64,000 bases of DNA from Podarcis bocagei (Eukaryota), in assembly GCA_964188305.1 (NCBI GenBank), contig OZ076899.1; one strand, 5' to 3'. A program made the position numbers and the translations under genes. Under the pieces are notes generated by a model. It worked only from the letters and a program-made list of their open reading frames with translations. It was not told where the DNA came from and ran no database searches. Shown one piece after another: positions 3,943-46,074 of this stretch; within the stretch, counting starts at the first letter, position 1, and each line of letters opens with the position of its first letter.

Positions 3943-6900
3943 GAGAAGTCCTACAGCCAAGCACTTCTGGGGTACCAGTCCACTGGAAGACTGAGAGCCA
4001 CCACTGCCACAATTCCTGCCCATCTGGTAAGTACTGCTGGTTTTTTAAAGGGTTTTTCTAGGGGTTTCAGAGGTTTAGAGAGTATGTGTATTTCAATTAT
4101 ACACAATTCCATGTATGTGTGCAGTGCCTCGGAACACAACCGCTGTGTAAATTGGGAGTTGCCTGTAGCTCTAGACCAATCTGGTTTATTGCTCAAAGGA
4201 ATATTGCTGATGCTATTTGAAGGGTTCTGGATATTATTATTATTATTATTATTGAATTTATATACTGCCCTATACCCGGGGGTCTCAGGGTGGTTCACAG
4301 AATAAAATCAAGATATAAAACCAAGATATAATTCACCATGCACGCAAATGTAATTCTTCTGTAACTTTAATTTCACTAGATACCTTCAAGACCTTTGATT
4401 GTACTGAATGGAGCTACTTCAGGAAACTCTTATCAAAGAGTTGTTTGGGAATAGATTTTTACATTTAACTGAGCATATTTATTTGGAATTCTAAGCTTGC
4501 ATTACCATTAGTGGAGTTAACTCCACAAATTTCACAATCAAACGAGGGACCAAACAAGACTATCCACTATTGCCACTCCAATTTGCAGCGGTAATAGAGG
4601 CTTTAGCTACAAATCTAAGAGATATCCAAATTCAGGGAACTGAACATAAATTAAATCCATTTGCACACAATCTGCTAAAATGTTCTATGATCCTAAAAGA
4701 GCTCTCTTGCCTCTACAGCAGACTCTTAGTATGTCTTCATGGAACTTTGAAGTGTCAGGCATAGCCCTACTGGCTTTAGCCCAAACGTAGCAGAGTTTTC
4801 CTGCACAGCGAGGAAGCTAGTTGCGGCAGTAATGACTAGTCAGCTAGACTCAGAATAACTATTTACAGGATTTATTAAAAAGGAAAAATAAAACCAGCAG
4901 AGTTTCTGCATACAAATAAAAGCAAATAAATCCTATCTTTCTTTCTCTCTCAAAACCATACACAGCACTTCTGACTCCTAACACACCTCACATCAAACTG
5001 TGCTAGCAATCCCTAGATAACAGAGTTGAGTGCTGCTCGTTAACCAATCAGAGTGAGTAGTTTCTAGGTCAAGCAGACCTGGGCTTTCTGCCAAGAGTAA
5101 ATTGCCACCAGCTGGAGTTAATTGGTGAAGCTAGAATCTGCAAGTTTCTCACGAGAACCAATTAACAGAAACTGAAACCGAAACTGAACACCCCCTCACA
5201 GATTCTGCTGAACAATTAACTCCAAATACACCTATGTAGGAGATTATTTTTCCAGCAAACCTAAACCCTTGCACATTCGCTTGTTCTTTACCTTTGCCAA
5301 TGGTTTAGTTAACACATCTGCCACATTTTCTTCACTTGATACATAAGTACAGGTGATTACATTGTCTTGTACACAGCAACGTACATTTTGGTATTTTACA
5401 GAGATATGTTTGGAACGCGATTTGAAACCCTCTGTTTTACTTAAGGTTATACAAGCTTGATTATCAATGTAAACTTGTACTGGTTCTCCACAATTTACAT
5501 TTAAATCTGCCATCAAATGCTTGAAATAAATCACCTCGTTGCACAATTCACTCAATGCGGCGTACTCTGATTCCGTTGATGACACACTTACAACGTCTTG
5601 CTTGCGTGACCGCCAGCTGATTAAAGCTCCACCGACCATTATGACTAGTCCTGTGACAGATTTTCTATCTGGCAAATTTCCCCAGTCACTATCACAGTAG
5701 CAACTCAACATTTCATCCTCTGAAGAATTTAATTGTAACATATAGCCAATTGTCTGTTTGAGGTATCTCAGAACTTGTTTTACCCCTTTCCAGGCATTTA
5801 GTGTGGGTTTTGAGACCAATCTACTTAATATGCCTACTGCATAGCTAATATCAGGTCTGGACCACTGTGCTATATACAATAAACTTCCAATTACAGAGTG
5901 ATATACATCAGGATGTTCAAATTCAGGACTCTCATCTATGTGAAGTGTTTTTATGAAACCTGGATCCATAGGCACCGCTGCCCCTTTGCAATCCTGCATC
6001 CTGTATGTAGTCAGTAGTTGTTTAACTTTGTTCTGCTGACTAATTAGGCAGCTGCCATCTTGGGCCCAGCACACTTCCAACCCTAGATATGTCCTAACCG
6101 GGCCTAAGTCCTTCGTACACCCACCTGCAGCCTACAATCTTTGCCCCCTCAGGCGCTGCTACTGGTGTAAAAACCTTGTGCTCATTCAGAGAGGACATCT
6201 CTTCCTCCATTGCCTGTTTCCAGAGCTCTGCCTCCTCTTTTGGTAACTTTAACACCTCCTGAAAACTCTTGGGTTCTGCAATTACACTAAACACATTTGC
6301 AGTATCTGGGGAAAAACGCACCGGAGGCACTCCTTTGTTTTGTCTTTTAGATCTTCTGGGAGAAAATTTTTCTTCTGACCCACTTTCCTCCTCAGAACTA
6401 CGACCTCTCTTTTGTTGCTTAGCAACTGGGCTCTGGCTAACTCCACTTTCCTGAGAGCTCTTATCTGAACTTTCCTCCCCCTCAGACTCTGATTCTCTAT
6501 GTCTACCTTCAGAGTCATGAAGCTCCTGGGAAGGTTCAAACCAAACCTCAGTATTGGCATGTAGTCTCTCCCAGCCACTATGTTCACAAAAACTGGCATT
6601 CCTGGAGATCACAATGCCATTTGTCCCTTCAGCAAAACGGAAACCTTTTCCCAGCTCCTGGTAACCCACAAACACTAGCTGTTTGGTCTTAGGATCTCCC
6701 TTCTTTCTCATTTGTTTCGGAATTAATACCCAGGCTTTTGATCCAAACACATGCAAATGGTCAATTTTAGGTTTTTTTCTGAAACAATTTAAAGTACGGG
6801 GTTGTACCTATTGTTTGATGAAAGAGCCTATTTTGGAGATAACACGCGGTGAGCATGCTCTCCCCCCAATAAGACATGGGCAAATCAGCATCATCAAGCA

Positions 6901-9900
6901 TGGCAAACATCATACCTTGTAAAGATCTGTTTTTTCGCTCTGCAACGCCATTCTCCTCTGGGGAAAAAACGTTCGTTTTCCTATGCCCAATGCCACGCTT
7001 TTGTAACCAATCTTTAAAAGCATTTGACATAAATTCGCCACCTCTGTCCGTCTGAATCCTTTTGAGTTTAGTGGACAGAAATCTTTCCACAGATGCCACC
7101 CAGCCTTTAAACTTAGTGAACACGTCACCCTTATTCTTCATGGGAAAAACCCAAGAATAACGCGTGGCGTCATCCACAATTGTTAGTGAAAAACGCGATC
7201 CACCCCTGCTTACAGCAAATGGACCAATTACGTCCATGTGAACCAGCTGTAGCGGTGACTCACTAACTCTGTCGCTTCTGGGGTAAGAGACTCTGTGGGT
7301 TTTAACCTTTTTACAAACATTACAATCAAGGTACTTGTTACAACTCTTTAAATTACCCCCATCAGCCAATTCAGACATTTTTAGTACACTTTTCCAGCAA
7401 GCATGCCCCATTTTCCTATGCAATAAGTGCACACAGTTGTCATGTATAGCTTTGTTATTCACTGCAGGCTGAGATTTACTGACTACTGCTGCAACTTGAG
7501 ATCCTGCTTTAAGCCAAAACAAGCCTCCCTCTGACTTAGCAGTGCCTAAAATCTCACCAGCCTTCTTAATAATGCAACTGTCTCCTTCAAAATACACTTT
7601 AAACCCAGCTTTTAGCAAACAATCTACAGACATCAGATTGCTCCTTAATGACGGCACACAAAGTACATTTTGCAGGCATTCACGAAGACAAGGAACAAAA
7701 ACTGCACCCCCCGAAATCACTTCGGAAGTACTTCCGTCTGCTAGAGCCACCTGGCTGCGCTGTGCTGAGTTCTTGGAAACAAACAATTCATCTGAATTCA
7801 CGATGTGGCGAGATGCTCCCGAATCGACCACCCAGACCGCTTGTTTCTCATCAGCACTCTTGACCTCGCCGGTCACCAGCTGAGCCGACTGTTTTCGTTT
7901 GAAGAATTTCTTTTTACGCTGCTGCTGCTGCTGCTGATCTCGTCTCTGCTCCTGCACCGGCCACTGAGACTTGACCAACTCCGGACATTGTCGTTTTAGA
8001 TGCGCTGAAGACCCACATCGGAAACAACGCCTAACAGCAAACGCTGACTCCTCACCAGTACGCTGCTTTTGCTTCACCTCTGGCACGGCATGAGAACTCC
8101 TTCCAAACCGTCCACCAGTAGAAGCCTCTGCAGCCACCGACCTTTCTTGCCTCTTCTGCCATTCTTCAATCAAACGCCCAGTAACGTAACTGACTGATAA
8201 ATCATGCTCCTGCATGCCTTCTAGAGACAAAACTAAATTATCCCAGCTTTCCGGGAGAGAACTCAAAATAATAGCCACCTTCTCCTGCTGGTCTAATGCA
8301 CAGTCTCTTTCCTGTAGCGCAACAAACTTTAACTGTAAACTGTGTAGGTGTTCCTGCATTGTAACCCCAGGCTGTAACATTGCCTTGTACAATGCCTTGC
8401 GAATGAACAGCTTGGAAACCGCTGTCTCACGCACATGGAGTTCTTTAAGTGCTTGCCACACACCTCTAGCTGTCTTGATTCCCCTCACATACGGCAACTG
8501 GGAATCTTCCAGCCCCAAGACAATTGTGGCCCTTGCTCTTTGGTCTTTATCGAGGTCTTCATCATCAGGCTTCGTAGGAAACTTACTCACCACTTGCCAG
8601 AGACGATCCCTCTGCAGCACTGCCTGCATGCGTTCCGACCACAGCAAGTAATTGGAGTCATTCAGACGCTCAAAAGCCATCTGAACTGGTTGTAAGGCCA
8701 TCTTGAGAGCGATGTCCCTGGAACCCGGAACCAGCTACTCACGACCACCGAGAGAGAAAACAGGAACCACAGCACCCAGCACTCACACGCTGCAGCTGTT
8801 GTCCTTGCGTCCGCTGCGTCACCAGCTCACCACGGTCAGGAACCAGCCAGAGAACAACAACCTCTGGAACTACTGGAACCAACGCCGTTGATGCTGACAC
8901 CACCGCAACTCAGGCTGGCAGTACAATGCCCATAACCTCATGGAACTTTGAAGTGTCAGGCATAGCCCTACTGGCTTTAGCCCAAACGTAGCAGAGTTTT
9001 CCTGCACAGCGAGGAAGCTAGTTGCGGCAGTAATGACTAGTCAGCTAGACTCAGAATAACTATTTACAGGATTTATTAAAAAGGAAAAATAAAACCAGCA
9101 GAGTTTCTGCATACAAATAAAAGCAAATAAATCCTATCTTTCTTTCTCTCTCAAAACCATACACAGCACTTCTGACTCCTAACACACCTCACATCAAACT
9201 GTGCTAGCAATCCCTAGATAACAGAGTTGAGTGCTGCTCGTTAACCAATCAGAGTGAGTAGTTTCTAGGTCAAGCAGACCTGGGCTTTCTGCCAAGAGTA
9301 AATTGCCACCAGCTGGAGTTAATTGGTGAAGCTAGAATCTGCAAGTTTCTCACGAGAACCAATTAACAGAAACTGAAACCGAAACTGAACATGTCTACTA
9401 AGGTTGCTGGGTGTGTGGGGGTGTGGACTAGATGACCTTCTACAATTCTATGAAAAATTAATTAAAACAAATAAGTGATGTTTCCTATTTCCATGATTTC
9501 AGAACACAACTGGTTACACTCTAATTCTGGTTTTAAATTGCTATGTGGTGGATTCAGATATCTCAAAGTAGTAAAATCATGGGGTTATGTCAACTTTACT
9601 CAAGGAATTTTGGGGATCTTGACAAAAGGCTACAGAAACATTTAAATTTAAGTTGGTTAGGCCAAATTGCAGCTGTGAAGGTGTGCATTCTTCATAAATC
9701 TCTATTTTTCTTTCAGGCCCTGCCCATAACTATCCCTCTTTCTCAATTGGCTCAATGGCAACACTTGATTAATAATTTTATTTCAGGAGGTAAAGAAAGC
9801 AGGGTATGCTGTCTAACCCTGTATTGAGCAAGAACTAAGGGAGGTCTTGGTGCCCCAAATCTTAAGTTGTATTACGAGGCTTTCCAATTAAAAGTTGACA

Positions 9901-38044: not shown

Positions 38045-39266
38045 ATCTTAGGTCTCTGGTGTCCAGCATTACCCTGGCAAAATAGCCTTCATTGACAGAA
38101 GAGCATAATAAAATCCTCTTCCTGGGTCTCAGATGACTTCAAGAATTGCTGATTTACACTCTGGTGCTGAAACATCCTGCCATTTGTATCACTTTCAGGG
38201 GTAGATAAGGAGAGATGGAATGCAGCGTACGAGGGGGAAGACTCACAAATGCAGAACACACAAAATCAAGCCTAATATAGTCTAAAATGTTTTAATAATT
38301 AAAGTGAAACATTTAAACATTATTAAAATAATAAAAATATACACCCGGGGTCTCCAATTCTTATACCAGTCTCCCTTTGATCCTAACCTTATCAAGGATT
38401 GTAATCATACTTTATCAAAGTTACCAATCTACCAATTGGACTTCTTTACAAAACACACTTTTACAAGCATTGAATACCACAACATAGCAATATAATACAG
38501 AGAATGACTGAGAGGAAAACTAATACCCCCCCTTAAGGCTTTCTTGATCCAACTATCTGAGGAGACCAACCTCTTGGATTCCAATATGAGATTCCTTTTA
38601 ATCATTTATGGACTTTTAAGAACCTTGGGAGAAGTATTCTCTCTTGCTATAAACATGTTTGTCTATGCTTTACACTCAGCAGGAAGGTTTATTCATAAAG
38701 AAGCACAAAGTTTTATTGCTTTAGCTTTATTTTGTGTCCAGTGTCAAATTAGTCTTCTGGACCCCATCTCTTTGCTATTCCACAACAACACCCCATTAAT
38801 GAATTCTTGTTAAAGGGCTTTCATCAATCATCAGCAGCCTCCCAATTTGGCACAGATGTTGACACATCCAAACAGAAATGTCTTCACCCTTCTGGGAGGT
38901 TCTTAACTTGCTGTGAACTTCACTAAAGGGTGAATCGCTTTCCAACACTCCAGAGGGACACGAAAAGGCTAATTGCACCTTGGGTTCACTTGCCCAATCC
39001 AAAAGCAAAATCTAATTAGAATTTTTCTATAACCCCAAAATTTCAAGTCCAGAAACTAATTTGTTAAACAATTCCAGTAGGTGCATTTGTCCAAATTAAC
39101 TACTTTTACTCTATAAAGCACATACAGACTTCCTTCACACGTGCAGTGATTCCTGCTTAATCAAAGCATATATTTATGTGCCACTGTTAACTTGTTTCCC
39201 ACGGTGCTTCTCCTGAAACCATTGGATCAATAGGGAAGATTGGGACACATGTAGAGACAAAGAAAT

Positions 39267-39628
39267 TAAGAGAGTTTGTACTGGTCCAGTAAACGCTTCC
39301 GCTGCGCCACCAGCAACAGCTCTCTTTGCAGAGCATTAATTAAGTCCAGTGCAGAGATTCTTGTTGCAGTACAAGGCTTCAGAGTCTCAGCAGCAAAGAA
39401 ATAACGACACAGGGAAGCCTGTCTTTCCAAAGACAGGTTTATTGCAGAAAGATAACAGAAACACCTCCGGAGCTTTCGGACATTTTTGCTTCACGCCCCA
39501 ACACACAGAGAAAACAAACACTCTTTATATACTGAGCAACTTAACAACTTAACAACTTAACGAGCTTGACTACTTAAAGTTACATGACATTGCTAACTTG
39601 CCAGCGTCTTAGGTTTCAAACCCTAACA
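39267..39628 (-). repeat. Copia-B 3' LTR
   Basis: Minus-strand TATATAAA at 39524-39531 and AATAAA at 39438-39443. Confidence 0.95.
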
Positions 39629-39659
39629 CCCCCTCTCGCTGGCAATACAAAAAACAAAA

Positions 39660-42600
39660 TTACTTCAGACCCATTTCTTCACAAAAGTTTTCATGCCGCT
39701 GAAAACCAAGCGGTTTTGTAAAACCATCAGCTTGATTTTCATGACTGGGACAGTAATTTAATTTAACAATTCCTGCTTTTACCGTTTGACAAACATTTTG
39801 AAAGCGGATATCCAAATGTTTTGTACGACCTTTAAACTGCCCATTTTGTGCTAACTTAAGACACGGTTGATTATCACCCCATACAGTGATTGGAGTGATG
39901 GCCTTTTCATACATCTCTTGTGCCAAGCATTTGTAAAATTCTAGATCTCTACATAACTCAGATAAGGCACAGAACTCAGCTTCTGTTGACGACAAAGCAA
40001 TCAGGTTCTGTTTCTTGGATCTCCACCCAATCAGAGAGTTACCAAATTTTATTACACAACCAGACACTGATTTTCTATCCTTTAAATTTGCCCAATCACT
40101 ATCTGCCCAACAAGTAATCTGTGCTTGTCCTTCCGAAGATAATTCAAGGCAAAAATCTTTGGTGTATTGTAAATATCTTAACACTCTTTGAATTCCTTTC
40201 CATGCATTTACACTAGGTTTCGAAGCTTCTCTGCTGAGTAAGTTAACAGCGTAAGCAATATCTGGTCTACTCCATTGCGAAAGATGAAGTAAGCTTCCCA
40301 GTGCTGACTGAAAAATTTCAGCACGCTTGAATTCAGCACTATCCTTGAACTCATTGTCTTTTACAAAACCCATTTCCATTGGTGTTCTAACACCTGCACA
40401 CTCCGTCATGTTAAACTTTTTCAACATTTGCAATATCTTGCCTTTTTGATTCAGTAGAAAACTGCCATTTTTGGTCCTATCTATCTGAACACCAAGATAG
40501 ACCTTCACATCACCAAGATTCTTAACTTTGAAGTGTTTATTTAACTCTTTGGCTAGTTTTTTTACTTGTTCTTGTGTCTTTGAAGTATAAATCAGGTCAT
40601 CTACATAAACAAGCAAAGATTCTTGAGCATCTCCTGAACTTCTGAAATATAAGCAATTGTCAGCCTTGCTCCTGCTAAAACCAATGCCTACCAAAACGTC
40701 ATTCAAACACTCATTCCAATTATGAGCAGATTGCTTGAGTCCATAAATAGATTTATGTAGTTTCCATACCTGATTTGATTTACCAACTTTCAATCCTGGC
40801 GGTAGCTCCATATAGAGCTCTTCAGCCAAGTCTGAATGAAGATAAGCTGTAGAGACATCAAATTGATTCACTTTGAACCCTTTCTGAGCAGCAACTGCTA
40901 ATAGTGCCCGTAGGGTTTCACTCCTTGAAGTGGGTGCATAGACTTCGGAATAATGTAACCCCTTTCTTTGCGTAAAACCTCGAGCTACAAGTCTTGCTTT
41001 ATACTCTGGTTTCCCCATCGCTGTTGTCTTTATCCTGTACACCCACCTACAACTTACTGCCTTGGCACCTTCTGGCAGTTTGGTGATGGAAAACACACCC
41101 AGTTCCTTCATAGAATTCAACTCCTTTTGCATGGCCTCACGCCACCTACTGGCCTCCTCCTGGGGTAATTGCTCAACCTCCTCAAAACTTTCAGGTTCGC
41201 AATTTGCCAAACCAGCCCAAACACTAATAGCTTGGTACCTTTCAGGAGGTATACCTTTGTTGGTACGCTTAGAACGCCTTAACAGTTCCTGCGATGTTCC
41301 TTCAGTTTCCCCCTCTGACCCAGAATCACTAGTCGTCACCTGTTTGTCACTAGTAGTTGAAGAACTTTCTGATTCTGACTTTACACGTCTCTCTTGCTGT
41401 ACAGGTGAACTTTTAGAGCTAGAAGATTCTGACTTTACAGACTTGGGTGAACTAGGCGATTTCTCACCCTTGTCCTCAGACTTAAATTCCTCAGTCTGTT
41501 CTGGAACTAATACCTGCCCTGGGGCCTGAGTTTCATTGCTACTGTTCACCACATCAAATAGTATGTCAGGATTTCCATGAATTTTATTCCAACCATCCTG
41601 TTCACAAAATTCTGCACTTCTGCTGATTGTGATTTTCGTTTGATTGCCTTCTACATTCACAAATCTCCAACCTTTTGTGTTTGCTTGATAACCACAGAAA
41701 AACATTTCTTTAGACCTAGGATCGCCTTTCCTACGTTGTGCCCTAGGCACCAGCACATAAGCACGACATCCAAAAACTCTTAGATGATCAATTTTTGGTT
41801 TTTTCCCAAATAGCATGAAGTAAGGAGTGTTGCCTACTGTGCTATTGTACACTCTATTAAAAGTATAATTCGCATACAGTGCAGCCTCAGCCCAAAAACG
41901 CTGTGGAAGTCCAGAATCAAACAGCAAAGCAGCAATGGCTTCCTGTAATGTTCGAAATTTTCTTTCGGCAACTGCATTCTCCTGTGGTGAATAGGGATTG
42001 GTAAGTCTATGAACTATACCTTTCCTTTTTAACCACGTCTCCAGCGTGTGGTTCACAAATTCCCCACCACGATCTGATTGTATTTTACGTACCCTGGTGT
42101 CAAATTTACATTCGACTTCTTCAATCCAATCCATCAGGATGGAAGCTGCTTTTGATTTTTCTTTCAGAAAGAAAACCCAACTAGCCCTTGAAAAGTCATC
42201 CACCAAAATTTGCATAAATCTCGCACCTCCAAGCGATTTGACTGGCATAGGGCCACACACGTCTGTGTGCACAAGTTCAAAGGGTTTCTTGCTTACTCTA
42301 TCAGATCTAGGATAGTTACATGTCTTAACCTTAGCATGTTTACAAGCACAACAATCCAGAAAATTTGGACAGGGTTTAATGTTACACTCCTCAGCTAAAT
42401 CTGGCATCTTGCTTACATACTTAAAGCATATATGAGCTAACCTTCTGTGTAGTAGATGTGCACAACCTGTATGAGGAGCCTTATTTACACACTTAGCTTG
42501 CACTTCACCTGTTGAACATCTACCTGCTGCTAACTGCTCTTCATCCAAAACAAAAAGCCCATCCTCACAGGGAATTTTAACTAGCTCCTTTCCCTTTTTC

Positions 42601-43820
42601 GAAATGGTGCACACATCATTTTCAAACTCAACCTTAAAACCACTTTTTACCAGGCATGACACACTCAAAAGTCCATTCTTCATTCCTGGAAGAACAAAAA
42701 CAGGAAGGTTAGTTTGCAAACAGTTAACATAAATTGTGCCTTTAAGGTTCATTTCTCGTTTACTATTGTCTGCTATAGTCACGGTTTTTGCAACTGGCAA
42801 TGTCTTGCAGTTCATCAAGCAGCCACTAGATGTCGCTGGAACTAAACTGTGACTTGCTCCACTGTCAATTATCCACTTCAAGGTTTGTTGGCTCCTTTTA
42901 GGACTCTGTTGTGCTGCCATTGCAGATAGTCCCTTATCAGCACCTGCTCCCCCTCTGGATCGTTGATTCTTGTAGTTCTCACGTCGTCTTCCTCTGTAAC
43001 TCCGGAAACTGGCCTTGGACTGTTGAAATTCCTGTTGCTTTTCTGGACACTTTGCTATCAAATGAAACCTGCTGCCACATCGAAAACATGACTTGCTGGC
43101 CATAGCAGACACTTGTGAGGCTTCCTTACAGCTCTGCCTGCTAGCTTCCCCACGCTGGGAATTATCTGAACATCCAACCCTTGGGGTATTTGAATTATCA
43201 ATACGTTTTCGATGATGTTGATATTCTTGTTCACACAATCTACCAGTCACATAATTCATATTCAGCTGGTCCTCTGGCAAAACTTGTAAAGTTAGTACTA
43301 AGTTTTCAAACCCTGCATGCAGGCTGCTAAGCAGAGTATAAACTTTAATATTTTCAGGAAAATTCACACCTAAAGATGACAGTCGGTTGAAATACTCAGT
43401 CATCTGTGACGTGTGTTCAACCACACTATCCTCTGGCTTCAGTTTCAACTCATACAAAGCACGTATAATGTTCACCTTCTCTCCGGGCGTGGCTCTATGG
43501 TGAATTCGCCTAAGAGCTTCCCAAATTTCAAATGCAGTCCTTAAATTTTCCACATGAGGTAATTGGGAATCGTCTATCGATACCATCAACATGCATCTAG
43601 CTTTAGTGTCCATTTTATCATGTTCCCTGTTCTGGGCATGTGCAGCAGCCTGTTGCTCTGCTGTGGCATCTGCTGCAACAGCCACAAACGGCTTTCGCCT
43701 CTGGACATAGTCAGCCCACACTTCTTTGGCTTCCAACCAGACTTGAGCCCTCTTAGACCACTGCACGTAATTAGCAGAGTTCAACTTTGTAAAGGGAACC
43801 TGGAAATTTTCCACTGCCAT
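39660..43820 (-). CDS. Copia-B Gag-Pol polyprotein (1386 aa; Gag, protease, integrase, RT, RNase H)
   Basis: Single ORF with CFRCGSRFHLIAKC, WIIDSGASH, HTDVCGP/SDRGGEF/AER, YKARLVARG, LLVYVDD, ADSDWA, ADGFTK. Confidence 0.97.
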   Translation of the reverse strand: MAVENFQVPFTKLNSANYVQWSKRAQVWLEAKEVWADYVQRRKPFVAVAADATAEQQAAAHAQNREHDKMDTKARCMLMVSIDDSQLPHVENLRTAFEIWEALRRIHHRATPGEKVNIIRALYELKLKPEDSVVEHTSQMTEYFNRLSSLGVNFPENIKVYTLLSSLHAGFENLVLTLQVLPEDQLNMNYVTGRLCEQEYQHHRKRIDNSNTPRVGCSDNSQRGEASRQSCKEASQVSAMASKSCFRCGSRFHLIAKCPEKQQEFQQSKASFRSYRGRRRENYKNQRSRGGAGADKGLSAMAAQQSPKRSQQTLKWIIDSGASHSLVPATSSGCLMNCKTLPVAKTVTIADNSKREMNLKGTIYVNCLQTNLPVFVLPGMKNGLLSVSCLVKSGFKVEFENDVCTISKKGKELVKIPCEDGLFVLDEEQLAAGRCSTGEVQAKCVNKAPHTGCAHLLHRRLAHICFKYVSKMPDLAEECNIKPCPNFLDCCACKHAKVKTCNYPRSDRVSKKPFELVHTDVCGPMPVKSLGGARFMQILVDDFSRASWVFFLKEKSKAASILMDWIEEVECKFDTRVRKIQSDRGGEFVNHTLETWLKRKGIVHRLTNPYSPQENAVAERKFRTLQEAIAALLFDSGLPQRFWAEAALYANYTFNRVYNSTVGNTPYFMLFGKKPKIDHLRVFGCRAYVLVPRAQRRKGDPRSKEMFFCGYQANTKGWRFVNVEGNQTKITISRSAEFCEQDGWNKIHGNPDILFDVVNSSNETQAPGQVLVPEQTEEFKSEDKGEKSPSSPKSVKSESSSSKSSPVQQERRVKSESESSSTTSDKQVTTSDSGSEGETEGTSQELLRRSKRTNKGIPPERYQAISVWAGLANCEPESFEEVEQLPQEEASRWREAMQKELNSMKELGVFSITKLPEGAKAVSCRWVYRIKTTAMGKPEYKARLVARGFTQRKGLHYSEVYAPTSRSETLRALLAVAAQKGFKVNQFDVSTAYLHSDLAEELYMELPPGLKVGKSNQVWKLHKSIYGLKQSAHNWNECLNDVLVGIGFSRSKADNCLYFRSSGDAQESLLVYVDDLIYTSKTQEQVKKLAKELNKHFKVKNLGDVKVYLGVQIDRTKNGSFLLNQKGKILQMLKKFNMTECAGVRTPMEMGFVKDNEFKDSAEFKRAEIFQSALGSLLHLSQWSRPDIAYAVNLLSREASKPSVNAWKGIQRVLRYLQYTKDFCLELSSEGQAQITCWADSDWANLKDRKSVSGCVIKFGNSLIGWRSKKQNLIALSSTEAEFCALSELCRDLEFYKCLAQEMYEKAITPITVWGDNQPCLKLAQNGQFKGRTKHLDIRFQNVCQTVKAGIVKLNYCPSHENQADGFTKPLGFQRHENFCEEMGLK

Positions 43821-44027
43821 TCTTGGGGTCTGCTGCTACTCCCTCTGTGTGCCCTTTCTTCTCTTTCCCCTTGGGATTTGTCTTACTCACTTTTCAGACG
43901 CCTCCAGCCTCCTCTGAAGCCTTTAAGAGCTGGATTTACGACCAAGCCGGTCTTCTCTCATCCAAAAGCTGCTTTCACTTTCTCTGCACACAATACAGCT
44001 GTAGAAACGTAGAAAGAGTCCATAACC

Positions 44028-44389
44028 TAAGAGAGTTTGTACTGGTCCAGTAAACGCTTCCGCTGCGCCACCAGCAACAGCTCTCTTTGCAGAGCATTAA
44101 TTAAGTCCAGTGCAGAGATTCTTGTTGCAGTACAAGGCTTCAGAGTCTCAGCAGCAAAGAAATAACGACACAGTGAAGCCTGTCTTTCCAAAGACAGGTT
44201 TATTGCAGAAAGATAACAGAAACACCTCCGGAGCTTTCGGACATTTTTGCTTCACGCCCCAACACACAGAGAAAACAAACACTCTTTATATACTGAGCAA
44301 CTTAACAACTTAACAACTTAACGAGCTTGACTACTTAAAGTTACATGACATTGCTAACTTGCCAGCGTCTTAGGTTTCAAACCCTAACA
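44028..44389 (-). repeat. Copia-B 5' LTR
   Basis: Direct repeat of 39267-39628; abuts PBS. Confidence 0.95.
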
Positions 44390-46074
44390 GAAATGCGGTC
44401 ACCAATTGACCTATTTTGAATTTTGGATTTCACAAAAACCTGATCTATTCAAAGACATAAAACACATGGGTAAACTTTCATACCTACTTTTAAATAATCT
44501 GGTACAATTTCAGCAATCATAATACTCAGCAATTGCTTTTTGGCAGTGATCCAAACCTACGTACAGATTTTCATTTTCCAATGGATATTCTCAGTACCTC
44601 AAACATGCAAATGATATCATACAAACAATTACATGGGAATCACAACACAATTAAATACATCAATTTACAGTTCCAACTACATTCAAACTACCATATAACA
44701 CAAAATACCAATTCTATATTTAGTTATTTATGAAAATCTATTGGTCTTCTTGCTGCTTTCACAAAGATCTTCACTCTCCAGGAGCTTCAACTCCTGTAGT
44801 CCAAAAATTATCTTTGCAAGTCACCTTCTTCCAGGCCCCATTTGCCTGCAGCCCCACAAGTCTTGGTTTGATGCAGATGAAAATAAATGGCTGTTGCTAC
44901 TTTGCTGTTATCTGGGAAGCCGTAAGCATACAATAAACACATTATTCTAAGTGATTTCCTGGCAGATTTCTTCCATTAACCTGGAGGGTTGAGATGCATT
45001 TCTGGAGCACCTAAGTCTGCAGAGAGAACAAAACTGCATCTGGGACTGAAAACATAGTTAGCATGGGAGGGGGTTAAAAAATGACAAACAGGTAAAGGGT
45101 TTTCCAAAATGACGATCCTTTTTTTTTGTAAACCATGTAAAGTTTTTAAGTTAGAAAATTTATTCAGCCTAGTTTATTTATAACTGTTCCTGTTATCTGC
45201 TTAATTTCCTTTAGCTAGTTGGCAGTAGGAGGGAAGAGAAAGAGAATCTTTTTGTTAATTCAAATACAATAGAAAACATTTTGCTATAGGGAGCAGTAAG
45301 AGTTTCCAGACACCCCCATTACCTGCAGAAAGCAAAATTATTATGGAAGAAAAAACTCTTACAGTTATGGGCAGTTATTTTTACACCAGGATAACTTATT
45401 TCCATCACGGGTTTATTCATACGAATTTTAGCAGTGACAGGTTTATTAGAAACAAAGTTTATTATTTATTCTCACATAATTAATCCGAACCATGTGGGTT
45501 CAAAATTAGAATTGAAAATTAATACTTTTTTAAAAAAATCAACTCTCCATTACTGAGTTGATGCACATGTTATTTACATGTACATGTTTGGATGTTGAAC
45601 CAACTTCCAGGCTTTCTGCCATATAAACACAAGTGTTCTAAAGGTGGAGTCTCAAGCCCCATGACTTCAAGCACATAATTAAATGAATTATTTACCATTT
45701 CCGTATTGAGATTTCCGTTTTGAATTTTCAGTTTTCAAACGTTTTGGAACTTGAACGGTCTTCTGAGATCAGGATCCTTAGATTATGACAGACAGCTAAT
45801 CAGATGTTGCAAAACAGCGGCCCTTAGTGTCTGGAACACGCAATAAACAGGGAAGTTACTGCAATGCCCCTGCAGGACAGGCAGCTCAGCCTTGCGCAGT
45901 TCACTGGGTGCCTCCAGTGCTGTGCATGACAAATCAACAATGGGAGTAGAGTTCATAAAATTTATCCATTCTGGTTTTGATTGCTTAAAAGTGATACAAT
46001 GTCTGTTTTGAACTTGGCTAAGTAGAAAATACATACAAACCTTCAGAAATTAATAGAAAATCACTGGTCTAACC

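What the first reader, a model, noticed from the sequence alone, without database searches (positions are those of the whole stretch)
44054..44071. Copia-B LTR contains an exact 18-nt copy of the initiator tRNA-Met D-arm, in tRNA-sense orientation
Seen: element-sense GTGGCGCAGCGGAAGCGT in both LTRs (39293-39310, 44054-44071), 26 nt upstream of the PBS and downstream of the LTR AATAAA, so probably in U5. Known: vertebrate tRNA-iMet begins AGCAGAGTGGCGCAGCGGAAGCGTGCTGGGCCCATAACC (recalled), so this is nt 7-24 of the same tRNA whose anticodon arm matches the PBS. An 18-mer match to the element's own primer is very unlikely by chance. It has the same polarity as the tRNA, so it cannot be an auxiliary PBS on the RNA. 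Inference: nascent minus-strand strong-stop cDNA could fold back onto the unpaired 5' tail of its own tRNA-half primer, or plus-strand DNA that reads into the primer could hairpin with it. Either would be a primer-capture step controlling strand transfer. Alternatives: a captured primer relic, or a Pol III A-box (TGGCGCAGCGG).
Basis: partly seen in the sequence, partly recalled or inferred. Interest (0 to 1): 0.75.

Follow-up and report, generated by a model that had tools for sequence, protein, structure and literature searches.

The report
Primer tRNA copy inside retrotransposon LTR
A young, intact lizard copia retrotransposon carries in the U5 part of its LTR a same-sense copy of the free 5' tail (D arm) of the initiator tRNA that primes its reverse transcription; its two closest sister families carry decayed versions, so it is more likely a working part, or a repeated by-product, of an unusual short-PBS priming system than chance.

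Summary
GTGGCGCAGCGGAAGCGT is exact in both LTRs of an intact 5123-bp Ty1/copia element on the minus strand. It lies in U5, 26 nt upstream of the PBS, in tRNA sense. It equals nt 7-24 of initiator tRNA-Met as printed for human and zebrafish.

New findings:
- The similarity continues colinearly to about nt 32.
- The PBS is only 8 nt (GGTTATGG).
- The two nearest sister families also have only the 8-nt PBS and also carry sense iMet-like blocks in U5: L014 (nt 9-35, 24/27) and L016 from Zootoca vivipara (nt 10-26, 14/15).
- These three families form one well-supported clade. The nearest outgroups have longer PBSs and no U5 block.
- Control tRNAs give no such matches, and the U5 regions are otherwise unalignable between families.

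Pol III promoter, chance and a tRNA-like fold are rejected.

The block is derived from the element's own primer. My estimate is about 0.6 that it is selected and about 0.35 that it is a tolerated copy-choice footprint. The favoured mechanism is that nascent strong-stop cDNA pairs with the primer's free tail; a PBS-closing stem is the rival. Copies within the family are too similar to test constraint.

The parts
44054..44071 (-). 18-nt sense copy of tRNA-iMet nt 7-24 (D arm) in U5 of the 5' LTR
   Evidence: Exact match. tRNA sequence from PMC8216282. z=9.9 against shuffles.
39293..39310 (-). The same 18-mer in the 3' LTR
44044..44050 (-). CTGGACC, the colinear continuation of the tRNA-like block. 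It matches tRNA nt 26-32 (CTGGGCC) at 6/7, after TTA in place of G25.
   Evidence: Colinear-extension Monte Carlo, p 0.003-0.02, post hoc. It pairs in the predicted tail:cDNA duplex.
44020..44027 (-). PBS octamer GGTTATGG, complementary to tRNA-iMet nt 32-39 (anticodon loop plus 2 nt). The next base, A, is not complementary.
   Evidence: The same octamer abuts the LTR in L003, L014, L015, L016 and Copia-A.
44003..44010 (-). Leader box ACGTTTCT, predicted partner of the motif's 3' half GGAAGCGT. It is also complementary to tRNA nt 18-24.
   Evidence: Pair probability is 0.83 in the window copy and 0.99 in the P. lilfordi copy. Its complementarity to the tRNA is not significant alone.
44028..44389 (-). 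5' LTR (362 nt, TG..TA). TATA at about 44284-44292; AATAAA at 44199-44204.
39267..39628 (-). 3' LTR, with 1 mismatch to the 5' LTR
39660..43820 (-). Intact 1386-aa polyprotein ORF (Gag, protease, integrase, RVT_2)
39629..39640 (-). Polypurine tract AGCGAGAGGGGG
44390..44394 (-). Target-site duplication ATTTC, upstream copy. The downstream copy is at 39262-39266.
8807..8822 (-). Weak sense iMet-like segment GTGACGCAGCGGACGC (14/16) in the leader of the related element Copia-A (4737-9391), 115 nt downstream of its 10-nt PBS (8928-8937)
   Evidence: p about 0.014; z=3.0. The blast E-value of 0.03 is similar to other chance hits in the window.

Best explanation
**What it is.** The block is a piece of the element's own reverse-transcription primer, written in sense into U5. 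It covers initiator tRNA-Met nt 7-24 exactly and continues, decayed, to about nt 32. That is the part of the half-tRNA primer left unpaired by the 8-nt PBS.

**Origin (inferred).** While making minus-strand strong-stop DNA, reverse transcriptase copied the free 5' tail of the annealed or packaged primer and then returned to the genomic RNA. This is the only simple route that puts primer sequence in sense orientation inside U5.

**Present role (inferred).** I take it to be a retained cis element of one clade of short-PBS hemivirus-like copia elements, and to act by base pairing.
- Once U5 has been copied and RNase H has cleared the template, the nascent strong-stop cDNA can anneal to its own primer's tail. 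This would be a 25-bp RNA:DNA hybrid with a 2-nt bulge.
- That hybrid would make the tail an RNase H substrate and trim or sequester the primer. Only the roughly 8 nt matching the short PBS would then remain to be copied into plus-strand strong-stop DNA.
- As RNA, the 3' half of the block may also pair with a leader box and close the PBS in a stem.

**What is shown.** Identity to the tRNA, U5 position, specificity to iMet, distribution across the clade, and pairing potential.

**What is inferred.** The copy-choice origin, selection, RNase H trimming and any effect on strand transfer.
For: - **Match and extension.** Exact 18/18 in both LTRs, equal to tRNA-iMet nt 7-24. There is a colinear extension to nt 32.
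- **Specificity.** Sense matches are specific to iMet. z-scores are 9.9 (Copia-B), 6.3 (L014) and 2.7 (L016), against at most 1.6 for elongator Met and Lys tRNAs in all six families.
- **Clade.** Copia-B, L014 and L016 form a clade with 100/100 support. L015 and Copia-A are the nearest outgroups.
- **PBS length tracks the block.** All three block-bearing families have only GGTTATGG followed by a non-complementary base. The families without a U5 block have PBSs of 9+, 10 and 14 nt.
- **Only the block is recognisable.** U5 regions are otherwise not alignable between families, with z at most 1.9. L014 and L016 share the same departure from the tRNA (C13 to A), which hints at common descent.
- **Pairing energies.** Primer tail against nascent cDNA gives -53.1, -42.5 and -36.4 kcal/mol, against about -25+-3 for shuffles. 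The three families without the block give p>0.15.
- **The motif does not prevent transposition.** At least 7 copies with near-identical LTRs exist in the window and in Podarcis lilfordi, and the window copy plus three Logan contigs carry a full-length 1385-1386-aa ORF; the six P. lilfordi insertions were found through partial gene models and their ORFs were not examined. The motif is exact in 14 of 16 LTRs.
- **A natural stop in an outgroup.** L003's 14-nt PBS ends just before the position of G26, which I recall as m2,2G26 in eukaryotic tRNAs. This fits a different stop rule being needed when the PBS is 8 nt.
Against: - **No within-family test of constraint.** The two LTR subfamilies differ by only about 3%, so about 0.6 changes are expected in 18 nt.
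- **Variable layout between families.** Position relative to the PBS is 26/28, about 44 and about 114 nt. The extent covered also differs (nt 7-32, 10-26, 9-35). This fits independent captures as well as one origin followed by indels.
- **L016 gap.** Its block stops at nt 26, so it would leave nt 27-31 unhybridised. That fits the trimming idea poorly.
- **The duplex is not independent evidence.** The fold-back duplex follows arithmetically from the sense similarity.
- **Ty1 counter-example (recalled).** In Ty1 the primer sequence is reported not to be inherited at all (Lauermann and Boeke 1994). A short PBS may therefore need no special device.
Confidence: 0.35

Rival explanations
1. Tolerated footprint. 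The block is a neutral by-product of reverse transcriptase copying the primer's free tail (copy-choice) during strong-stop synthesis. It was captured independently in each family and is now decaying. The short PBS only makes capture more likely, because it leaves a long free tail next to the polymerase.
For: - This mechanism by itself predicts the sense orientation, U5-only location, iMet specificity and link to a short PBS.
- Blocks differ in position, extent and decay between families.
- No D-arm secondary structure is kept in L014 or L016.
- The within-family data have no power.
Against: - All three families of one clade carry a recognisable block, while the rest of U5 is beyond alignment.
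- L014 and L016 share the C13-to-A change (roughly p=0.07, my estimate).
- 18/18 is intact in Copia-B.
- No documented case of such captures is known to me.
Confidence: 0.35
2. RNA-level primer mimic (PAS-like switch). The block is one strand of a stem that closes the PBS. Its partner in the leader (ACGUUUCU) is also complementary to the tRNA D-arm 3' strand. The real primer would therefore compete with the mimic, giving a bipartite primer site that is opened on tRNA binding. This resembles the HIV-1 primer activation signal and its masking stem, or the Ty1 boxes.
For: - GGAAGCGU pairs with ACGUUUCU with probability 0.83-0.99 in both Copia-B subfamilies, enclosing the PBS.
- The box lies 16-17 nt from the PBS start, close to the register of a continuous tRNA duplex (+15).
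- The 8-9 nt between PBS and box vary between copies, while the box does not.
- Sister family L015 has an interrupted antisense PBS reaching tRNA nt 18 (p about 0.01).
- Anchored alignment of the Copia-B leader to the tRNA complement gives p=0.013 (P. lilfordi type) and 0.11 (window type).
Against: - The box's match to the tRNA complement is not significant on its own (p about 0.75, p 0.10-0.16).
- Only 8 of the 18 or more nt would be used, so exact identity of nt 7-16 is unexplained.
- The same stem is not predicted in L014 or L016.
- The whole 91-nt region folds no better than shuffles (z=0.19).
Confidence: 0.2
3. Internal Pol III promoter. The motif's A box (TGGCGCAGCGG) drives a small Pol III transcript, as proposed for tRNA-like LTRs of the Helenus TRIMs.
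For: The motif contains a genuine tRNA A box. TRIMs with tRNA-like LTRs exist (PMC10886601).
Against: - There is no B box 30-60 nt downstream in either LTR context. GGTTATGGAC lacks the recalled C56 and A58 positions.
- No Rfam tRNA match at E up to 10.
- The element is a 5.1-kb autonomous unit with TATA and AATAAA.
- Sister-family blocks have lost part or all of the A-box sequence (L014 GGCGAAGCAG, L016 lacks it).
Confidence: 0.03
4. Unrelated insertion or chance. The block is a fragment of a tRNA-iMet pseudogene or of a tRNA-derived SINE that landed in the LTR, or simply a random match.
For: tRNA-derived repeats are common in vertebrate genomes. Kojima proposes SINE insertion into LTRs as the origin of Helenus.
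Against: - Chance expectation is about 0.
- The block matches the very tRNA used as primer, in sense, in U5, in three related families.
- It has sharp borders with no SINE body, no tRNA 3' half and no B box.
Confidence: 0.04

Closest known systems
Hemivirus-type priming (Drosophila copia, Ty5): an internal fragment of tRNA-iMet serves as primer
   Same: It is a Ty1/copia element whose PBS abuts the 5' LTR and is complementary to the anticodon region of tRNA-iMet. [quoted passage not shown] Kikuchi 1986 and Ke 1999 are recalled, not read.
   Different: The PBS here is only 8 nt, against the 14 nt seen in L003 and about 15 nt that I recall for Drosophila copia. U5 also carries a sense copy of the primer's unpaired tail. 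I found no description of this for copia, Ty5 or other hemiviruses in the searches run.
Ty1 extended primer site (Box 0, Box 1, Box 2.1) and the HIV-1 primer activation signal
   Same: Both combine a short PBS (10 nt in Ty1) with further sequences near the PBS that relate to the D and T arms of the same primer tRNA. The HIV-1 PAS is masked by a stem in the viral RNA until the primer is engaged (PMC3592414; PMC11181671).
   Different: Those boxes are complementary to the tRNA. The block here has the same sense as the tRNA, so it cannot bind the primer as RNA. At most it could be the masking strand of such a switch.
HIV-1 tRNA-like element (TLE) next to the PBS
   Same: It is a same-sense mimic of the primer tRNA placed beside the PBS in the viral 5' UTR (PMC5113203 and PMC5689005; PMC11181671).
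   Different: The TLE mimics the anticodon arm in three dimensions and binds lysyl-tRNA synthetase. Here the similarity is linear sequence identity to the D arm. The D-stem pairing is not kept in the sister families, and no protein partner is indicated.
Helenus and Cassandra TRIMs (tRNA-like or 5S-like sequence in LTRs)
   Same: tRNA-derived sequence sits inside an LTR. Some fungal Helenus also use anticodon-loop PBSs, including one for iMet (PMC10886601).
   Different: Helenus are 0.3-1.3-kb non-autonomous elements with conserved A and B boxes, presumed to be Pol III units. Here the element is an autonomous 5.1-kb Pol II element with no B box. The fragment comes from its own primer, and only the 5' half is present.
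Tf1-type self-priming
   Same: A stretch of the element's own 5' RNA stands in for primer sequence (recalled: Levin 1995, Lin and Levin 1997). Other notes on this genome report such elements.
   Different: The Copia-B block lacks the part complementary to the PBS. Similarity ends at about nt 32 and there is no CCATAACC in the LTR, so it cannot self-prime.

Membership tests
Ty1/copia (Pseudoviridae) LTR retrotransposon | Gag, protease, integrase and RT (RVT_2) in that order in one polyprotein | tested here: met
   Pfam hits along the 1386-aa ORF: Retrotran_gag_2, Pol_BBD, gag_pre-integrs, rve, SH3_retrovirus, RVT_2.
Ty1/copia (Pseudoviridae) LTR retrotransposon | Direct LTRs, 5-bp target-site duplication, PBS after the 5' LTR and PPT before the 3' LTR | tested here: met
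   362-nt LTRs with 1 mismatch, TSD ATTTC, PBS GGTTATGG, PPT AGCGAGAGGGGG.
Hemivirus-type (half-tRNA) priming | PBS complementary to an internal (anticodon) stretch of tRNA-iMet rather than to the 3' CCA end | tested here: met
   GGTTATGG is the complement of tRNA nt 32-39 and abuts the LTR. This is only 8 nt. The same octamer is extended to 10-14 nt in relatives.
Hemivirus-type (half-tRNA) priming | A cleaved 5' fragment of the tRNA is actually used as primer | not testable with these tools
   Needs cDNA or primer mapping from particles.
Helenus / TRIMp3 (tRNA-like LTR, Pol III) | Short non-autonomous element, under about 1.3 kb | tested here: not met
   5123 bp with an intact polyprotein ORF.
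Helenus / TRIMp3 (tRNA-like LTR, Pol III) | Conserved A box and B box (GGTTC) in the LTR | tested here: not met
   An A box is present, but there is no B box and no Rfam tRNA match.
PAS / Ty1-box type auxiliary primer site | The motif is complementary to the primer tRNA | tested here: not met
   The 18-mer is in sense. A candidate complementary box in the leader (44003-44010) was inconclusive.
HIV-1-like tRNA-like element | Folds like a tRNA arm and binds the cognate aminoacyl-tRNA synthetase | not testable with these tools
   No tRNA-like fold was detected. D-stem pairing is not kept in L014 or L016. Protein binding was not addressable.

The most novel reading that the evidence does not exclude
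The U5 block is a selected 'primer-tail catcher'. Because U5 repeats the primer's free tail in sense, the first 45 nt or so of strong-stop cDNA anneal back onto the primer's own tail. That hands the tail to RNase H and trims the half-tRNA down to the 8 nt that match the minimal PBS. This would be a sequence-encoded way of setting the plus-strand strong-stop end, independent of tRNA modification and unknown in retroelements. The short PBS and the block would then be one co-evolved system that defines a clade of vertebrate copia elements.
Probability: 0.25. Interest if true: 0.8.

Novelty: new variant of a known kind. Interest (0 to 1): 0.6.

Why it matters
How half-tRNA-primed (hemivirus-type) elements make, place and remove their primer is still poorly understood. 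Vertebrate copia elements have hardly been studied mechanistically.

This clade offers a clean natural experiment. It combines a minimal 8-nt PBS with a sense copy of the primer's unpaired tail in the strong-stop region, and its sister lineages have long PBSs and no copy.

- If the block is selected, it is a new kind of cis element for reverse transcription: a primer mimic that acts through the cDNA or through a PBS-closing stem.
- If it is neutral, it is direct genomic evidence that reverse transcriptase copies its own primer during strong-stop synthesis, and that such events become fixed.

Either way, the finding gives concrete, testable predictions for primer length and strong-stop ends. 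It also warns annotators that tRNA-like hits in LTRs need not be Pol III promoters.

Tried and rejected
**Alternative identities for the motif**
- Rfam scan of the LTR and leader at E up to 10 gave no tRNA or other credible family.
- The 91-nt U5-PBS fold is no more stable than shuffles.
- A gap-penalised local alignment of the 26-nt spacer to the rest of the tRNA was not significant (p=0.25). Only the later, restricted colinear test was significant, and that test was post hoc.
- The idea that U5 is a whole eroded tRNA, with the LTR end CTCTCTTA matching the tRNA 3' end CTCTGCTA, is not supported.

**Other matches in the window**
- Other TGGCGCAGCGG-like hits (37913, 51394) are low-complexity CG repeats.
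- A 17/18 sense match to tRNA nt 17-34 at 6061-6078 lies in Copia-A coding sequence (YLGLEV motif) and is chance.
- The Copia-A leader 'motif' is 14/16, and its blast E-value of 0.03 resembles other chance hits in the window. I treat it as weak.

**Collection searches that found nothing useful**
- A metagenome scan for D-arm, 10-40 nt, then GGTTATGG found only bacterial dehydrogenase genes and one other bacterial locus.
- A viral-contig scan with the protein alignment found no relative.
- A Gag-only protein search found no hits. The exact window protein is not on record.

**Pairing and constraint tests that failed or lacked power**
- The leader box as a significant tRNA complement failed.
- The U5-leader stem is not reproduced in L014 or L016.
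- The within-family conservation test has no power.

No expression or per-site diversity data were obtained.

- The three tRNA sequences used in scripts were typed from the text of PMC8216282.

Full report
**1. The observation**

The 18-mer GTGGCGCAGCGGAAGCGT occurs exactly twice in the 64-kb window, at 39293-39310 and 44054-44071. Both copies are on the minus strand, and none is expected by chance even with two mismatches allowed.

The two copies sit in the LTRs of one element on the minus strand:
- 5' LTR 44028-44389 and 3' LTR 39267-39628. Each is 362 nt with termini TG..TA, and they differ at a single base.
- Target-site duplication ATTTC and polypurine tract AGCGAGAGGGGG.
- An intact 1386-aa ORF with Gag, protease, integrase and RVT_2 domains in copia order.

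In element sense the LTR has TATATAAAG, then AATAAA (44199-44204). The motif lies about 115 nt further on, so it is in U5. It ends 26 nt before the LTR end. GGTTATGG follows the LTR directly (44020-44027).

The recalled tRNA sequence is right. Human initiator tRNA-Met is printed in PMC8216282, and its 5' 31 nt in PMC13625232. A zebrafish 5'-tRF with identical nt 1-30 is printed in PMC10341043. The motif is nt 7-24, in the same sense. GGTTATGG is the complement of nt 32-39.

I could not fetch the lizard's own tRNA gene. No tRNA gene lies in the window or in the fetched loci.

**2. What the block is not**

- Rfam finds no tRNA-like fold in the LTR or leader, and the region folds no better than shuffles.
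- There is no B box, so a Pol III type-2 promoter is not present. The element has ordinary Pol II signals.
- Other A-box-like hits in the window are CG-rich low-complexity sequence.
- A 17/18 sense match to tRNA nt 17-34 inside Copia-A is coding sequence and therefore chance.

**3. Extent of the block**

The borders of the exact 18-mer are sharp. A gap-penalised alignment of the spacer to the rest of the tRNA is not significant.

A restricted colinear test does show a continuation. After TTA in place of G25, the next seven bases CTGGACC match tRNA nt 26-32 (CTGGGCC) at 6/7, with p 0.003-0.02. That test was post hoc.

The block therefore resembles nearly the whole part of a 39-nt half-tRNA primer that an 8-nt PBS would leave unpaired.

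**4. The family**

The protein clusters with annotated fragments from Podarcis lilfordi (GCA_947686815.1) and with Logan contigs. I fetched six P. lilfordi insertions and two Logan contigs.
- Their LTRs are about 94% identical to the window's and nearly identical to each other.
- The motif is exact in 14 of 16 LTRs. One has G9 to T. One has a 1-nt deletion beside an assembly gap.
- The spacer to the PBS is 26 nt in the window type and 28 nt in the P. lilfordi type.
- The bases just after GGTTATGGA vary, so PBS complementarity really is about 8 nt.
- At about 3% divergence, only about 0.6 changes are expected in 18 nt. The family cannot show constraint.

**5. Relatives: the main new result**

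An exhaustive HMMER search and contig look-ups gave three more families, and a word-based search gave a fourth. The window's Copia-A is a fifth.

| Family | Protein identity to Copia-B | Source | PBS | Sense iMet-like block |
|---|---|---|---|---|
| L014 | 49% | ENA assembly | 8 nt | U5: GGCGAAGCAGAAGTGTGCCTGGGCGCCAT against tRNA nt 9-35, 24/27 with two 1-nt gaps; about 100 nt upstream of the PBS |
| L016 | 39% | Zootoca vivipara | 8 nt | U5: GCGAAG--GAAGCGTGC against nt 10-26, 14/15 with a 2-nt gap; about 44 nt upstream of the PBS |
| L015 | 42% | ENA assembly | GGTTATGGG, then an interrupted antisense match reaching tRNA nt 18 (p about 0.01) | None in U5 |
| Copia-A | 38% | This window | 10 nt | None in U5; weak 14/16 match in the leader |
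| L003 | 31% | ENA assembly | 14 nt | None |

(Loci.)

Local alignment of each LTR plus leader to the tRNA in sense gave these z-scores against shuffles: Copia-B 9.9, L014 6.3, Copia-A 3.0, L016 2.7, L003 1.9, L015 -0.4. The L003 value is an artefact of the GGGCCC palindrome in its PBS. Elongator tRNA-Met and tRNA-Lys never exceeded z=1.6.

On maximum-likelihood trees, Copia-B, L016 and L014 form a clade with 100/100 support. L015 and Copia-A are the nearest outgroups (99-100%), and L003 is far away.

The U5 block is therefore found in all three families of one clade and in none of the outgroups. It coincides exactly with the shortening of the PBS to 8 nt.

Between families the U5 regions are otherwise unalignable, with z at most 1.9. 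L014 and L016 share the same departure from the tRNA (C13 to A). This is a weak hint of common descent, roughly p=0.07 by my estimate.

**6. Mechanism: origin**

Reading the primer during plus-strand synthesis would place antisense tRNA downstream of the PBS. That is not what is seen.

A sense block inside U5 is what results if reverse transcriptase, early in minus-strand strong-stop synthesis, switches template onto the free 5' tail of the primer or of another packaged tRNA-iMet, and then returns. This explains the orientation, the U5 location, the choice of tRNA and the link with a short PBS, because a short PBS leaves a long free tail. This step is inference.

**7. Mechanism: present role**

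Three readings remain.

(a) *cDNA fold-back.* The nascent cDNA is complementary to the primer tail over nt 7-31. The predicted duplex is -53 kcal/mol in Copia-B, -42.5 in L014 and -36.4 in L016, against about -25+-3 for shuffles. The three other families are not significant.
- Such an RNA:DNA hybrid would be an RNase H substrate. Trimming the tail would leave only the 8 nt that match the PBS to be copied into plus-strand strong-stop DNA.
- L003's 14-nt PBS ends exactly before the position of G26. I recall this base as m2,2G26 in eukaryotic tRNAs and as a block to RT. That would be the natural stop for long-PBS relatives.
- This reading uses every base of the block and explains the co-occurrence with the short PBS.
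- Its weaknesses: the duplex merely restates the similarity, L016's block is too short for it, and Ty1 is reported (recalled) not to inherit primer sequence at all.

(b) *RNA-level switch.* In Copia-B the 3' half of the block (GGAAGCGU) pairs with the leader box ACGUUUCU, 16-17 nt after the PBS start. Pair probability is 0.83-0.99, and the stem encloses the PBS.
- The box is also complementary to tRNA nt 18-24, nearly in register with the PBS. The arrangement resembles the HIV-1 PAS and its masking stem, or the Ty1 boxes.
- However, the box is not significant on its own, and the stem is not reproduced in L014 or L016.

(c) *No function.* The block is a tolerated footprint of copy-choice that is captured repeatedly.

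I put selection at about 0.6 in total: about 0.35 for (a), about 0.2 for (b) and a small remainder for other functions. I put the neutral footprint at about 0.35.

**8. What is known**

- Hemivirus-type priming with a short tRNA segment is established.
- Auxiliary primer contacts (Ty1 boxes, HIV-1 PAS) and a same-sense tRNA mimic beside the PBS (HIV-1 TLE) are known.
- tRNA-like sequences in the LTRs of Helenus TRIMs are known, and Kojima remarks that partial tRNA similarity in LTRs is not rare.
- I found no description of a sense copy of the primer's own D arm in U5 of an autonomous copia element, nor of its link to a minimal PBS. The absence of a paper in this library is not proof of novelty.

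**9. Limits**

No read-based diversity or expression data exist here.
- Contig look-ups were exhausted at six families.
- The hosts of L003, L014 and L015 are unknown (ENA assemblies).

**10. Verdict**

The block is longer than reported and is shared across a clade.

Noticed in passing
window 4737-9391 (minus strand): Copia-A is a 4655-bp copia element with identical 454-nt LTRs and TSD AGACA. It has an intact 644-aa Gag-PR-IN ORF but no RVT_2 core; the ORFs downstream carry only the SH3-like domain and an RT C-terminal remnant. It looks like a very young RT-less, non-autonomous derivative, as noted elsewhere in this genome.
   Followed up: partly
window 44003-44011; window 8986-8994 and 4785-4793; L014 about 456-466; L016 about 2941-2949: A CpG-containing heptamer CTACG[C/T]T lies near the PBS in four families of the clade. 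It is in the leader of Copia-B and L014 and in U5 of Copia-A and L016. All three minus-strand occurrences in the 64-kb window are in the two copia elements. It may be a conserved cis element. Its relation to the tRNA is unproven.
   Followed up: partly
L016:2833-2841: The Zootoca family also carries an antisense 9-mer, TTCCGCTGC (complement of tRNA-iMet nt 12-20), in U5 about 70 nt upstream of its sense block. This is not significant alone (p=0.14).
   Followed up: no
L015:323-347: The sister family L015 has an interrupted, extended PBS, GGTTATGGGATCCAGCCTGCGCTTC. It matches the complement of tRNA-iMet nt 39 to 18 with two small indels (p about 0.01). This suggests primer pairing, or primer read-through, well into the D arm.
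   Followed up: partly
window 44179-44198 (and the 3' LTR copy): A perfect 9-bp inverted repeat, CCTGTCTTT-GG-AAAGACAGG, lies directly after the AATAAA signal of the LTR. It may be a hairpin at the R/U5 border.
   Followed up: no
window 44301-44324 versus L002/L008-L013: The U3 octamer repeat GTTAAGTT is present in three tandem copies in the window's LTRs and in two copies in all P. lilfordi and Logan copies. This marks two LTR subfamilies.
   Followed up: no
window 6061-6078 (minus strand): GGAAGTGTGCTGGGCCCA matches tRNA-iMet nt 17-34 at 17/18 in sense, but it encodes the conserved YLGLEV(C)WAQ stretch of the Copia-A pol remnant. I judge it chance.
   Followed up: yes
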